Shown here: positions 4,890 to 48,801 of the stretch, piece by piece
Layout: each line of letters begins with the position of its first letter
How positions within the stretch are numbered: position 1 is the first letter of the stretch
From: Podarcis erhardii
Lineage: Eukaryota
DNA length: 64,000 bases
NCBI GenBank assembly: GCA_964252035.1
Contig: OZ176200.1
Direction: 5' to 3' (one strand)
The notes under the pieces: generated by a model
What the model saw: only the letters and a program-made list of their open reading frames with translations
Told to the model about the DNA's origin: nothing
Databases searched by the model: none
Made by a program: the position numbers and the translations under genes

Positions 4890-5303
4890 CAGTGGTGCCC
4901 CGCAAGACGAATGCCTCGCAAGACGGAAAACCCGCTAGACGAAAGGGTTTTCCGTTTTGGAGGTGCTTCGCAAAACAAATTTCCTATGGGCTTGCTTCGC
5001 AAGACGAAAATGTCTTGCGAGTTCCTGCGGGGTTTTTTCTCCTCCCCCCCCTTTTTCTAAGCCGCTAAGCTGCTTATCAGCTGATCCGCTAAGCCGCTTA
5101 ACAGCTGATCCGCTAAGCCGCTTATCAGCTGATCCGCTAAGCCGCTTAACAGCTGATCCGCTAAGCCGCTTATCAGCTGATCCGCTAAGCCGCTAATAGC
5201 GCTAATCCGCTAAGCCGCTAATGGGCTTGCTTCGCAAGACGAAAAAACCGCAAGACGAAGAGACTCGCGGAACGGATTCTTTTCGTCTTGCAAGGCACCA
5301 CTG
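4890..5303. mobile_element. Young Tigger/pogo-like MITE with an internal minisatellite
   Basis: TA|cagtggtgccccgcaagacgaa ... ttcgtcttgcaaggcaccactg|TA (22-bp TIRs, 20/22 identical); repeated gcaagacga motifs; CpGs intact. Confidence 0.9.
5062..5222. repeat. 24-bp minisatellite ccgctaagccgcttaWcagctgat, five copies plus two degenerate units
   Basis: Units start at 5062, 5086, 5110, 5134 and 5158; variant units at 5182 and 5207. Confidence 0.95.
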
Positions 5304-12057: not shown

Positions 12058-12150
12058 GTAGAGTCAGAAGGGATTGTAAGGGTCATTCCACCTGAAATGC
12101 AGGAATCGCAACAAAAGAATCCATACCTGATGGCTGGATAGGCAATCCTG
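12058..12150 (-). mobile_element. Decayed CR1 3' fragment
   Basis: agagtcagaagggattgtaagggtcatt ... aatgcaggaatcgcaac resembles the reverse complement of the CR1 tail. Confidence 0.45.
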
Positions 12151-20890: not shown

Positions 20891-21097
20891 NNNNNNNNNN
20901 NNNNNNNNNNNNNNNNNNNNNNNNNNNNNNNNNNNNNNNNNNNNNNNNNNNNNNNNNNNNNNNNNNNNNNNNNNNNNNNNNNNNNNNNNNNNNNNNNNNN
21001 NNNNNNNNNNNNNNNNNNNNNNNNNNNNNNNNNNNNNNNNNNNNNNNNNNNNNNNNNNNNNNNNNNNNNNNNNNNNNNNNNNNNNNNNNNNNNNNNT
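20891..21097. other. Assembly gap (207 N)
   Basis: Run of n characters. Confidence 1.
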
Positions 21098-33264: not shown

Positions 33265-33420
33265 GAGATGGTGACTGGCCCAAAGTTACCCATTGAGCTT
33301 CATAGCTGAGTGGGGATTTGAACCCTGGTCTCCTAGGTCCTAGTTCTAAACACTACACTACACTACACTACACTACACTACACTACACTACACTACACTA
33401 CACTACACTACACTACAGAC
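33265..33420 (-). mobile_element. Squam3-like SINE 5' half with an expanded A-box region
   Basis: Minus-strand B box ggttcaaatcc (33314-33324) and core gggtaactttgggccagtcacc. Confidence 0.7.
33351..33415. repeat. (CACTA)13 pentanucleotide microsatellite
   Basis: Read directly from the sequence; perfect array. Confidence 0.97.
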
Positions 33421-44982: not shown

Positions 44983-45826
44983 GTGAGTGAATGTTATCGC
45001 CATATGATTTGTAAAGGAGGGTTTTGATTTTTTACAGAAAACTGTAAGCTTTTGGTGTAGATCAAGAATGCAGTAGCTGGGTAACTGGGTTAGGTTAACT
45101 GATTTTTAAAAACCTTACAATTAGCTTAAAAGGTGATTGAGATTTTAATTGAACATTGTTTAAAATGGCAATTATTTATAGTGCAGAAAAACTATGGGCA
45201 ATAGTGCCACATTAGATGGGGCATTTTGCCTTCATGCTCTCCCGGGGTCAGGGGGTGGGCTGCATTTTTAACAAGACTAACACATGGCACAATATGGCCT
45301 AGCTGCTCCTGAAACTGTCATTGTTACCAAACAAATTGAGGGGCAAAGGATATAGTTGCAAGGATTTAATATTGAGAAGCATTCAAATAAAACTGGCATT
45401 GCCTTCAAATTGGAACTTTCCCTCAGAAATGGAAATGGAGGGAGTAATTGTATGAGAAGCATAGAATTAACATGCTTGGCCCTTAAGATTAGAAGAGCTA
45501 GGCAGATTCCATCCATTTCATCAAGTGCAGTCTTATGGTTCAGCATGCTCTAGAAACCTGTCTGAAATGTATGTAGAGACCCATGGAACTAAGATGTTAA
45601 GAGTTAAGAGTCTCCGATTTTTAACTTTTGAATAGGATTTGAATGTGCCCACCACTTAGAATAGGATTCTAAGCAACTATAGCAGGAGCTAAATATATCT
45701 TATCACATTACATCAGGACACTTTGGATATGAAATAGTAAGTTATTAGGAATTACTCAGTGTAGATGGGTTGTAATATTTTAAGTTGGAACCATGACAAG
45801 TTTTTTTTTTCTGTTTCACGTAACAG

Positions 45827-45949
45827 AATCGTGTAGAAATAAATGATGTAGACCCTGACGTTTTTAAAGAGATGATGAGGTTCATTTATACTGGGAAAGC
45901 TCCAAACCTTGACAAAATGGCCGACAGCTTGTTGGCAGCAGCAGACAAA
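45827..45949 (+). CDS. SPOPL: SPOPL exon 8 (BTB: [41 protein letters not shown])
   Basis: Acceptor taacag|, donor aaa|gtaagt, 123 nt. The donor is tandemly duplicated (see findings). Confidence 0.97.
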
Positions 45950-45981
45950 GTAAGTAATTGCAGCAGACAAAGTAAGTAATT
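45938..45981 (+). repeat. Perfect 22-bp tandem duplication of the exon 8 end and 5' splice site
   Basis: gcagcagacaaagtaagtaatt occurs twice (45938-45959 and 45960-45981). Confidence 0.97.
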
Positions 45982-46119
45982 GCCTATACAAGGGCTTTAT
46001 AGGTCATTTGAATGAAACCCAAAAAGTGTTTGTTTTGGGAGATTTTTATATAGTTAAGAAAAGCACAGTAAAGAACTGGATTATTAGCAGTAGAAATGTA
46101 TTAGAAGACATAAGATCCT

Positions 46120-46692
46120 TCTGGGTATTGTCGGCCAGAAGGTGTTAAAGAAGGACCGAACATTCTTCATGTATGCAACAACGGCAGCAAGGATACTCAT
46201 CGCAAAAAACTGGAAAACTCAAGATCTACCCACACTGGAAGAGTGGCAGATGCAACTGATGGACTATATGCAACTGGCCGAGATGACTGGCAGAATCCGT
46301 GACCTGGGAGAAGAGAAGATGGAGGAAGACTGGGAGAAATTCAAGAAGTATCTACAAAAACATTGTAATTTGGTTGAATGTTAAAAAGGATGCTAGATTA
46401 TAAAAAATTGGCCACCACTAAATTAGATTTGAAATTTGACGATAAGTGAGACTAAAGAAAATATAAAATTTTTTGGAAGAAGTGCTAGATCATATTTGAA
46501 TGTGTGGACATGAGATTGTAAACAAGTTGATAATTTGTTTGGAAAAAACTTTTAACGATGTAAATGGGAGCGGGAGACGCGAGGGAGTCCAAAGAAGTGA
46601 TGAAATTATGTCTGTGATAGAAGTAAGATTGTTTATTATTTGTGCATTTATATTTAAAAACTTTAATAAATATTTATAAAAAAAAAAAAAAA
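46120..46692 (+). mobile_element. Young 5'-truncated L1-clade LINE (ORF2 C-terminus, 3' UTR, polyA) in SPOPL intron 8, sense orientation
   Basis: Open frame ...MYATTAARILIAKNWK...PTLEEW...EDWEKFKKYL*; AATAAA at 46665-46670; polyA tail; perfect 18-bp TSD tagaagacataagatcct at 46102-46119 and 46693-46710. Confidence 0.92.
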
Positions 46693-47281
46693 TAGAAGAC
46701 ATAAGATCCTATGTAGTTTAGCTAAATGCTTCCTCTCAGGTGTTCTGGGTGTCTTTAGAGAGAGCTTGAGAAACAGCTGCCTTCGTATGCTGTTGTGCGA
46801 ATTGAATGGATTTGTTTACGAGGAGTAAATATGCAAAGACAAGTGATAGAGGACTAATTCAGGCCTATTGCCCGTTACGCTGTGTCCAGACATTATCACA
46901 GTGTCACGGATACAGAGGGTGAGCTTCAGATGCGAACCCTTAACATTTGTTTAAAGCTTGAGATGACAGCAGCAGACTTTTATAGCTAATAGTAGGCAAA
47001 TTGTATTTAAGCTGTATATATACATAGGTCCTCTTCTGCCAGAGATACAGCCACCAGGTAACATAACCAGCCGGCACAGTCCCATTCCACCTCACACAGC
47101 CACTGAATGTGTGTTTGAAGGGAGTCTGTGTATTTCCTTACATTAACACAGTTGGCAATTCTTTGAGGGGCCTATTACTTCACAGTTGCTAGAAAGTATA
47201 TACCTATTAGAAATGTCTGCTTTTTAGATTAAGGTAGGAAAGAACAAATGTGAACAACGGGCTTTCCCCCTTTTCCTTTAG

Positions 47282-47424
47282 TATGCACTGGAACGGCTAA
47301 AGATCATGTGTGAAGAAGCTCTGTGTAGTAACCTCTCAGTAGAAAATGTTGCAGACATCCTCATCCTCGCAGATTTGCACAGTGCGGAGCAGTTGAAAGC
47401 ACAAGCAATAGAGTTTATTAACAG
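47282..47424 (+). CDS. SPOPL: SPOPL exon 9 (BTB end/3-box/BACK: [47 protein letters not shown])
   Basis: Acceptor ttcctttag|, donor ag|gtatgc, 143 nt. Confidence 0.97.
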
Positions 47425-47520: not shown

Positions 47521-47574
47521 GTGCAGTGTTCTTAGGCAACTTGGTTGTAAAGATGCGAAAAACTGGAACAGCAA
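47521..47574 (+). CDS. SPOPL: SPOPL exon 10, the 54-nt SPOPL-specific BACK insertion (RCSVLRQLGCKDAKNWNSN)
   Basis: Acceptor tgccacag|, donor aa|gtacgt. The peptide matches the recalled human SPOPL insertion RCSVLRQLGCKDGKNWNSN, which SPOP lacks, so it identifies the paralogue. Confidence 0.95.
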
Positions 47575-48801
47575 GTACGTACTGGCTACGCTTCAAAACC
47601 ATCTGTAAACAGTGTGTGGTATTTGGCACAAGTCCTGTAATCAGAGTAGACCTATCAAAGCTAATAGATGTGACTACGGGTCATTAATTGGCTATACTCT
47701 GAGTAAAACGTGGTTGAATACAACCCAATCAGTTTTTGTTGTCTTGATCTTAAATTCTATCATAGCAGAATAAACAATGTATACCAAAAACAAATAATTA
47801 GAATACCAGTATCCATATAGATTTGTTCCCAACTCTCTGTTGCAAAAGAAATGAAGCCACTTTCTGTTACCAATTATTTCCTGTATCTCCATTTTCTGTA
47901 GACTTAAGCAGAGTTGAAACTGAGACTATGGGTGGAATTCCAGGTCACACTCTTCTGATTGTTCCATCTGCGCAAGCATTTCTGCTTGCCAGATGGAGCA
48001 GTTCCTCTCTCCTTCCCCTGCCCCAAATGTGCTCTTCTCGGGGTTTTCCTCATTCCCTAGAGCAAATTTGGGGGAGGGGGGAAACCATGGGTTCTGCTGG
48101 CACACTTGAGTTAGTTGAATCCGGGCTAGCAATTCTTTCCTTGTGCATAGGGCACTGAAATTGACAGAGAATATCTTCTACTGTTCTCATACCACATGTG
48201 CAGCGTCTTAAGTCACAGAAGATATTCTTGTAATATCCATCTGAAACAGTATAGGGCCTGTGCTGAAACCTTAAACAAGCTTCCCATGTTGATCCAGGAC
48301 TTGAAGATCTGAAAGACAGCTTTTGTAGTCATGGTCAAACTTAATCATGTGATTCAGAGAAGACAATGTTGGACTGACTGCAAGTTTTTAAATTCTGCTT
48401 TGGTAGCAGGGTGGCTGGGGTGACCCAACGGGATGGGTGGGGTACAAATAATTAAAAATTTGGCTTAAAATTGAAAAACAAGTTTGCTGCAGATTCTCCA
48501 AAAGCTAGATTGTCCTTTGCAGCCAAGTGCACAATTTCTAAAACAGCTGAAAAAATTCTCCTTAATAGTACAATGCTATGCATGCTTACTCAGAAGCAAC
48601 TCCCATTGAGTTAATGGGGCTTGCTTCCAGAAAAGTATGCAGAGGATCGCAGGCACTCTTCTACTCCATGGCTTAGATATACTAGCAAGCTGATTTACCC
48701 GGGAGCATGTCCCACTGAACTTACTGTAGTAACTTCAAAGTGGACATACATAGGATTGCATTGTCTCCTGAACCTGATTCTTGTAATTCTTTTATTGACA
48801 G

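What the first reader, a model, noticed from the sequence alone, without database searches (positions are those of the whole stretch)
45938..45983. Tandem duplication creates two identical 5' splice sites 22 nt apart at SPOPL exon 8
Seen: gcagcagacAAA|GTAAGTaatt is repeated perfectly, giving donors at 45950 and 45972 with identical -12 to +10 context. The first donor gives the 392-aa protein. The second adds 22 nt, shifts the frame ([17 protein letters not shown]) and stops at 47311-47313, 165 nt upstream of the last junction. That makes it an NMD substrate, or a MATH-partial BTB product lacking the 3-box, BACK and NLS. Established: competing nearby donors of equal strength are both used, often favouring the downstream one. 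Inference: this may be a natural hypomorphic SPOPL allele or a newborn unproductive-splicing switch, and because SPOPL tunes SPOP-Cul3 activity, dosage could matter.
Basis: partly seen in the sequence, partly recalled or inferred. Interest (0 to 1): 0.72.

Follow-up and report, generated by a model that had tools for sequence, protein, structure and literature searches.

The report
Duplicated splice donor in lizard SPOPL
In this wall-lizard assembly a perfect 22-base tandem duplication gives the SPOPL gene a second identical splice donor that would break the reading frame if used. Three related Podarcis genomes lack the duplication, the same kind of variant is already known in humans, and I could not test it against raw reads or RNA.

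Summary
Window 45938-45983 is a perfect 22-bp unit in 2.1 copies. It puts identical AAA|GTAAGT donors at 45950 and 45972.

With the upstream donor, all ten coding exons encode exactly the 392-aa SPOPL shared by Podarcis muralis, P. lilfordi and P. raffonei. The downstream donor adds 22 nt, giving ...[22 protein letters not shown], with the stop at 47311-47313. That stop lies 166 exonic nt before the last junction, so the transcript should be an NMD target.

All three congeneric assemblies have a single copy of the unit, so the duplication is derived and private to this genome. The flanking alignment is clean, and this assembly has few small indels. Whether the duplication is real, whether it is heterozygous or fixed, and how each donor is used all remain untested.

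The published record does not support a general preference for the downstream donor at 22 nt:
- F7 IVS7: only the upstream site is used.
- Globin constructs: the downstream site wins only beyond about 30 nt.
- Human SLC22A1 rs35854239: both sites are used, NMD removes the aberrant form, and the effect on expression is mild.

It is most likely a private variant that is hypomorphic at worst, and a new member of a known kind. The scan's first readers also noted 12-bp and 15-bp donor duplications elsewhere in this genome; neither was followed up.

The parts
45827..45949 (+). SPOPL coding exon 7 (exon 8 if one non-coding first exon is counted; that exon was not verified). It encodes BTB-domain residues 239-279 of the 392-aa protein.
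   Evidence: Translation [41 protein letters not shown]. Exact match to P0257 residues 239-279. Acceptor ...cgtaacag|AAT and donor AAA|gtaagt.
45938..45959 (+). Copy 1 of the 22-bp unit: the last 12 nt of the exon plus the first 10 nt of the intron. It carries the authentic (upstream) donor GT at 45950-45951.
   Evidence: TRF; sequence. This copy corresponds to the single copy in L001, L002 and L003.
45960..45981 (+). Copy 2 of the 22-bp unit, a private insertion relative to three Podarcis assemblies. It carries the second identical donor GT at 45972-45973.
   Evidence: In the 4-way alignment it appears as a window-specific 22-bp insertion with tandem identity 22/22. It is the only private change between 45820 and 46032.
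45982..45983 (+). A 2-bp 'GC' microhomology that follows the unit and equals its first two bases.
   Evidence: The single-copy state in the congeners reads TTG[GCAGCAGACAAAGTAAGTAATT]GCCTATAC.
47282..47424 (+). Next SPOPL exon ([12 protein letters not shown]...FINR). In the +22 frame it reads [10 protein letters not shown] with the premature TGA at 47311-47313.
   Evidence: exact match to P0257 residues 280-326.
47521..47575 (+). The 55-nt exon that encodes the SPOPL-specific 18-residue insertion in the BACK domain (CSVLRQLGCKDAKNWNS). It lies downstream of the premature stop.
   Evidence: The insertion is described in PMC10696467.
48800..48943 (+). Last coding exon (…[14 protein letters not shown]…PRKRLKQS*). 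Its 5' edge is the last exon junction.

Best explanation
This is a young, lineage-private 22-bp tandem duplication. It probably arose by replication slippage or microhomology-mediated repair at a 2-bp GC microhomology. It copied the last 12 nt of SPOPL coding exon 7 together with the first 10 nt of the intron.

The authentic donor (45950) and the rest of the gene are untouched and still encode the normal 392-aa SPOPL. The copy provides a second donor (45972) that is identical from -12 to +12.

At 22 nt the two sites are probably too close for two U1 snRNPs to bind at once, so they should compete for one. My inference is that the upstream site still produces a large share of normal mRNA. An unknown share, somewhere between about 0 and 50%, would be spliced at the downstream site. 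That gives a +22-nt frameshifted mRNA with a stop 166 nt before the last junction, which NMD should remove.

The net effect is a neutral to mildly hypomorphic SPOPL allele, not a regulatory device.

- **Shown:** the duplication in the assembly, its absence from three congeners, the intact gene, and the reading-frame consequences.
- **Inferred:** that it exists in the animal's DNA, donor usage, and NMD.
For: - Perfect 2.1-copy repeat.
- Single copy in the three other Podarcis assemblies, L001, L002 and L003, which carry the identical SPOPL protein.
- The window is 1.6-2.4% diverged from each and closest to L003.
- The 22-bp insertion is the only private change between 45820 and 46032.
- Over 19 kb the window has 14 private 1-5-bp indels, against 17 in L003 and 27 in L001. 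It has only 3 private insertions >=6 bp, so the assembly shows no indel noise here.
- A comparable private tandem duplication exists in another assembly (136 bp, 133/136, L002:3615).
- All ten coding exons are intact with canonical splice sites and match P0257 exactly.
- The 7 variable CDS sites among the four genomes are all synonymous.
- Frame and stop position are confirmed.
- Precedents:
  - SLC22A1 rs35854239, an 8-bp donor duplication, gives 38-52% aberrant splicing in minigenes. In liver it gives only 0.3-0.6%, with a modest loss of expression, at allele frequency 40.6% (PMC8137991).
  - Downstream dominance appears only beyond about 30 nt separation (PMC3413131).
Against: - An assembly or consensus error is therefore not excluded, and donor usage is pure inference.
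- The precedents disagree on magnitude: F7 IVS7 shows no use of downstream copies (PMC1557585), while other constructs favour downstream sites.
- The precedents are mammalian, not squamate.
- No splice-site scoring model was run. Because the 9-mers are identical, it would not separate the two sites anyway.
Confidence: 0.55

Rival explanations
1. The duplication is real but splicing-neutral. As in human F7 IVS7, the splicing machinery takes the first (upstream) of the tandem identical donors and the downstream copy stays silent, so SPOPL dosage is unaffected.
For: In F7 IVS7, a 37-bp minisatellite starts at the exon 7 donor. Five to nine identical donors are present and only the most upstream is used. 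[quoted passage not shown] SPOPL protein is under strong constraint in Podarcis, with 0 amino-acid changes against 7 synonymous changes. That makes persistence of a neutral variant more likely than persistence of a damaging one.
Against: In SLC22A1, an 8-bp donor duplication does divert 38-52% of minigene transcripts. This donor (GTAAGTA, 7 contiguous pairs to U1 by inspection) is stronger than a typical pseudo-site. The spacing (22 nt) also differs from F7 (37 nt).
Confidence: 0.25
2. The duplication is an assembly or consensus artefact. The extra 22 bp is not in the animal's DNA, and the real locus is single-copy as in the other Podarcis genomes.
For: All three other Podarcis assemblies are single-copy. 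No reads could be checked. First readers noted two other perfect short donor duplications in the same genome (s1-268862, s1-234792), which could hint at a systematic artefact. Neither note has been verified.
Against: The window is a different taxon (1.6-2.4% diverged), so single-copy congeners say nothing about this animal. The local alignment is clean and the assembly's small-indel load is as low as the best comparator. The 2-bp microhomology and perfect register are what slippage produces. A rough neutral expectation is 2 such duplications per window x about 10 donors x 14 permissive positions / 64 kb. That comes to about 3 donor duplications in the 682 windows read so far, which matches the number noted without invoking artefacts.
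Confidence: 0.13
3. The duplication is real and strongly damaging. The downstream (intron-proximal) donor dominates, most transcripts are frameshifted and degraded, and the allele is close to null. It would be carried heterozygously in the sequenced animal.
For: [quoted passage not shown]
Against: The proximal-site rule sets in only beyond about 30 nt separation and is complete at >=45 nt. Here the spacing is 22 nt. The closest natural analogue (8 bp, SLC22A1) keeps about half or more normal splicing.
Confidence: 0.07

Closest known systems
Human SLC22A1 (OCT1) rs35854239: 8-bp tandem duplication of the exon 7 donor (PMC8137991)
   Same: It is a small perfect tandem duplication at an exon-intron junction that creates a second identical donor. 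Use of the new donor lengthens the exon, shifts the frame and gives an early stop. The aberrant mRNA is nearly invisible in tissue (attributed to NMD), and the net effect is a mild loss of expression.
   Different: The duplicated unit is 8 bp rather than 22 bp and contains intronic bases only, whereas here 12 exonic bases are copied too. It is a common human polymorphism with measured splicing. Here population frequency and splicing are unknown, and the gene and taxon differ.
Human F7 intron 7 37-bp minisatellite that starts at the exon 7 donor (PMC1557585)
   Same: The tandem repeat's first unit spans the exon-intron boundary, so identical donors follow the authentic one.
   Different: F7 has 5-9 units of 37 bp and is an old, polymorphic, tolerated array in which only the upstream site is used. 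Here there are two units of 22 bp, apparently new, and usage is untested.
Engineered duplicated 5' splice sites in globin pre-mRNAs (Cunningham et al. 1991, as summarised in PMC3413131)
   Same: Two identical competing donors face one acceptor, and the outcome depends on their separation.
   Different: These are artificial substrates in HeLa cells or extracts. The clear rule (intron-proximal site wins) applies at separations >30-45 nt, beyond the 22 nt seen here.
Conserved unproductive-splicing (AS-NMD) switches, such as poison exons of splicing factors
   Same: An alternative splice choice leads to a premature stop and a predicted NMD substrate.
   Different: Those elements are conserved and regulated. 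This duplication is absent from three congeners and shows no sign of regulation.

Membership tests
SPOPL (speckle-type POZ protein-like) gene | MATH + BTB + BACK domain order in a protein of about 392 aa | tested here: met
   The ten exon translations match P0257 exactly and contiguously. P0257 is the 392-aa 'speckle-type POZ protein-like' of P. muralis, P. lilfordi and P. raffonei. Its precomputed Pfam hits are MATH_2, BTB and BACK_BPM_SPOP (faint).
SPOPL (speckle-type POZ protein-like) gene | An 18-residue insertion in the BACK domain that distinguishes SPOPL from SPOP | tested here: met
   Exon 47521-47575 encodes CSVLRQLGCKDAKNWNS. The insertion is described in PMC10696467.
Donor-site tandem-duplication variants (SLC22A1 rs35854239 type) | A perfect tandem duplication across the exon-intron junction that yields two identical GT donors | tested here: met
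   The sites are identical from -12 to +12.
Donor-site tandem-duplication variants (SLC22A1 rs35854239 type) | Use of the added donor shifts the frame to a premature stop more than 50-55 nt before the last junction | tested here: met
   The addition is 22 nt and the stop is at 47311-47313, 166 exonic nt before the last junction.
Donor-site tandem-duplication variants (SLC22A1 rs35854239 type) | The variant is present in the organism's DNA, and both donors are used in cells, with the aberrant form degraded | not testable with these tools
Conserved AS-NMD regulatory switch | The alternative site is conserved in related species | tested here: not met
   L001, L002 and L003 (three Podarcis assemblies) all have one copy.
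F7 IVS7-type junction minisatellite | A tandem array whose first unit spans the donor, with only the upstream site used | tested here: inconclusive
   The array geometry is met, with 2.1 units. Usage and copy-number polymorphism could not be tested.

The most novel reading that the evidence does not exclude
The duplication is fixed in this Podarcis species, and the downstream donor is used in a tissue- or condition-dependent way. That would make it a newly born unproductive-splicing valve that sets SPOPL dosage, and through it the size and activity of SPOP-Cul3 oligomers, caught within a few million years of its origin.
Probability: 0.04. Interest if true: 0.6.

Novelty: new member of a known kind. 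Interest (0 to 1): 0.28.

Why it matters
If real, this is a natural squamate example of a variant class known from human genetics: a small duplication that gives a constrained gene a second, frame-breaking donor.

It could serve as a natural test of how vertebrate spliceosomes choose between identical donors 22 nt apart. That spacing lies between the cases already measured (8, 37 and >45 nt).

SPOPL caps SPOP oligomers (PMC10696467), so a dosage change could in principle matter. Nothing here shows that it does. For users of this assembly the practical point is that the locus should be checked against reads before annotation or variant calls rely on it.

Tried and rejected
1. **Reads and RNA test.** They went only to local reading, translation, folding and alignment. 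Read laying was therefore unusable.
2. **Joined spliced model.** Exons were compared piece by piece with a database protein. A search for transcripts carrying the frameshifted tail was therefore not done.
3. **Same-species contigs.** No same-species ORFs turned up, only other taxa.
4. **RNA structure.** Folding 45880-46030 gave z = 0.33, so no structure masks either donor.
5. **Dating from copy identity.** This has no power. Even if the duplication were as old as the split from the nearest congener (0.75% lineage divergence), only about 0.3 mismatches are expected in 44 nt.
6. **Link to the nearby insertion.** The 573-bp retroelement about 140 bp downstream has its own perfect 18-bp target-site duplication, so the 22-bp repeat is not its TSD.
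7. **Literature search.** One search returned an unrelated +2dupT SERPINA1 case, which I discarded.

Full report
**Observation.** The sequence at 45938-45983 reads GCAGCAGACAAAGTAAGTAATT twice, followed by GC. Tandem Repeats Finder reports period 22, 2.1 copies, 100% matches, no indels, score 92. A perfect 22-nt tandem repeat is not a chance event in 64 kb (expectation about 4e-9). An exhaustive scan found only three perfect tandem duplications with units of 14 bp or more in the whole window: a 48-bp minisatellite at 5072, a 14-bp unit at 12134, and this one. The two GT donors are at 45950 and 45972, and their contexts are identical from -12 to +12.

**Gene and reading frames.** Ten coding exons of one gene lie on the + strand between 35532 and 48943, all with canonical splice sites. 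Every whole-codon exon piece matches P0257 exactly and contiguously. P0257 is the 392-aa 'speckle-type POZ protein-like' of Podarcis muralis, P. lilfordi and P. raffonei.

The 55-nt exon at 47521-47575 encodes the 18-residue BACK-domain insertion that distinguishes SPOPL from SPOP and makes it a cap on SPOP oligomers (PMC10696467). The duplicated junction belongs to coding exon 7 (45827-45949, NRVEIND...LLAAADK). That is exon 8 if one non-coding first exon is counted, which I did not verify.

With the upstream donor the normal protein results. With the downstream donor the exon gains 22 nt (VSNCSRQ). The junction codon is A|TA, and the next exon reads CTGTAKDHV*. The TGA is therefore at 47311-47313, with 111 + 55 = 166 exonic nt before the last junction. 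That is well beyond the 50-55 nt rule for NMD (established knowledge).

All comparisons were exon by exon.

**Is it in other genomes?** I used a stop-free stretch around a MATH exon outside the region of interest, then a returned bird SPOPL and a cluster listing. This led to P0257 and the three assemblies that encode it: L001 (GCA_964188315.1), L002 (GCA_947686815.1) and L003 (GCA_027172205.1). All three have one copy of the unit: TTG[GCAGCAGACAAAGTAAGTAATT]GCCTATAC.

The window is none of these genomes. It differs from each by about 2-2.4% in mismatches. In a four-way alignment it groups with L003, sharing 72 derived sites with it against 39 with L002 and 16 with L001. It has about 130 private substitutions in roughly 17 kb. 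The duplication is therefore derived and private to this genome's lineage. Earlier notes of this scan call the genome a wall lizard, which fits.

From then on I kept the letters of that stretch out of every search tool and used them only for local reading, translation, folding and alignment.

The indirect evidence favours a real variant:
- Between 45820 and 46032 the 22-bp insertion is the only private change.
- Over 19 kb the window has 14 private 1-5-bp indels, against 17 in L003 and 27 in L001.
- It has only three private insertions of 6 bp or more: a microsatellite, this duplication and a retroelement.
- The unit is followed by a 2-bp microhomology, as slippage products are.
- Another assembly carries its own private tandem duplication (136 bp, L002:3615).

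I put an artefact at about 13%. Fixed and heterozygous states cannot be told apart. Copy identity has no dating power, because only about 0.3 mismatches are expected even at maximal age.

**How it most likely works.** Both donors are AAA|GTAAGTA. By inspection this gives seven contiguous pairs to the U1 5' end (+1 to +7) plus -2, so both sites are strong and equal. No RNA structure distinguishes them (z = 0.33).

The literature does not support a simple 'downstream wins' rule at this spacing:
- In duplicated-globin substrates the intron-proximal site rises steeply only beyond about 30 nt and reaches about 100% at 45 nt or more. The threshold is attributed to steric interference between U1 snRNPs (PMC3413131).
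- In human F7, a 37-bp minisatellite starts at the exon 7 donor. Of five to nine identical donors, only the most upstream is used (PMC1557585).
- The closest natural analogue is SLC22A1 rs35854239, an 8-bp donor duplication with 40.6% allele frequency.
  - In liver the aberrant mRNA is 0.3-0.6%, attributed to NMD.
  - Expression drops modestly, without pharmacokinetic consequence (PMC8137991).
- A much larger junction duplication (403 bp, FGG) gives a null phenotype (PMC9052919).

From these I infer that the upstream donor still yields a large share of normal SPOPL mRNA. Some 0-50% of transcripts may be diverted to the +22 form and degraded. The allele would then be neutral to mildly hypomorphic.

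SPOPL is tightly constrained in Podarcis: there are 7 variable CDS sites among the four genomes, all synonymous. A strongly damaging version would therefore be expected to be rare and heterozygous.

**How unusual is it?** A rough neutral expectation can be made from this window. Take about 2 perfect two-copy duplications per 64 kb, about 10 coding donors, and 14 registers in which a 22-bp unit contains the 9-nt donor. That gives about 0.004 donor duplications per window, or about 3 in the 682 windows of this genome read so far. First readers have noted three: this one, a 12-bp case (s1-268862) and a 15-bp COL18A1 case (s1-234792). These notes are unverified, and the estimate assumes this window's gene density is typical. 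Even so, no enrichment needs explaining.

**Verdict.** The mechanistic premise is only partly right. The functional claims (hypomorph, switch) are untested, and the 'switch' reading is disfavoured by the absence of the duplication from three congeners. The finding is a new member of a known kind of variant and of modest interest. Its main value would be as a natural 22-nt data point for donor competition, once reads and RNA confirm it.

Noticed in passing
window 46102-46710: A 573-bp insertion (46120-46692) is private to this genome. It is flanked by a perfect 18-bp target-site duplication (tagaagacataagatcct at 46102-46119 and 46693-46710) and ends in AATAAA plus a 14-A tail. Its 5' part is an open frame ending at 46381. 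It looks like a young 5'-truncated LINE (L1-like) 3' end, in sense orientation in the SPOPL intron about 140 bp downstream of the duplication, so it places a poly(A) signal inside the intron. L001-L003 have the empty site. The element type is my inference: it lies in the stretch I kept out of search tools.
   Followed up: partly
same genome, other pieces (earlier notes s1-268862 and s1-234792): First readers noted two more perfect short tandem duplications of splice donors in this genome. One is 12 bp in an HMG-box gene and one is 15 bp in COL18A1. Neither was followed up. Together with this case, they should be checked against reads as a class.
   Followed up: no
L002:3615-3750: The GCA_947686815.1 Podarcis assembly has its own private 136-bp near-perfect tandem duplication (133/136) in the first coding intron of SPOPL.
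   Followed up: no
window 45801-45802 and 33370-33412: There are two further private length changes. One is two extra T in the polypyrimidine tract just upstream of the acceptor of the duplicated exon. The other is a 43-bp expansion of an (ACACT)n microsatellite.
   Followed up: no
window 20891-21096: A run of 206 N lies just upstream of a GC-rich stretch (about 21.2-21.9 kb) that is probably the SPOPL promoter and non-coding first exon.
   Followed up: no
proteins P0041 and P0056: Annotated SPOPL isoforms in a bird (Limosa) and a monkey (Chlorocebus) end a few residues after ...AAADK, at the same exon boundary. Truncated MATH plus partial-BTB products are therefore already predicted in other vertebrates. 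Whether they are real is unknown.
   Followed up: no
L001:6086-6464: There is a 379-bp insertion private to GCA_964188315.1 in the SPOPL intron after the MATH exon. It is probably a SINE or another repeat.
   Followed up: no
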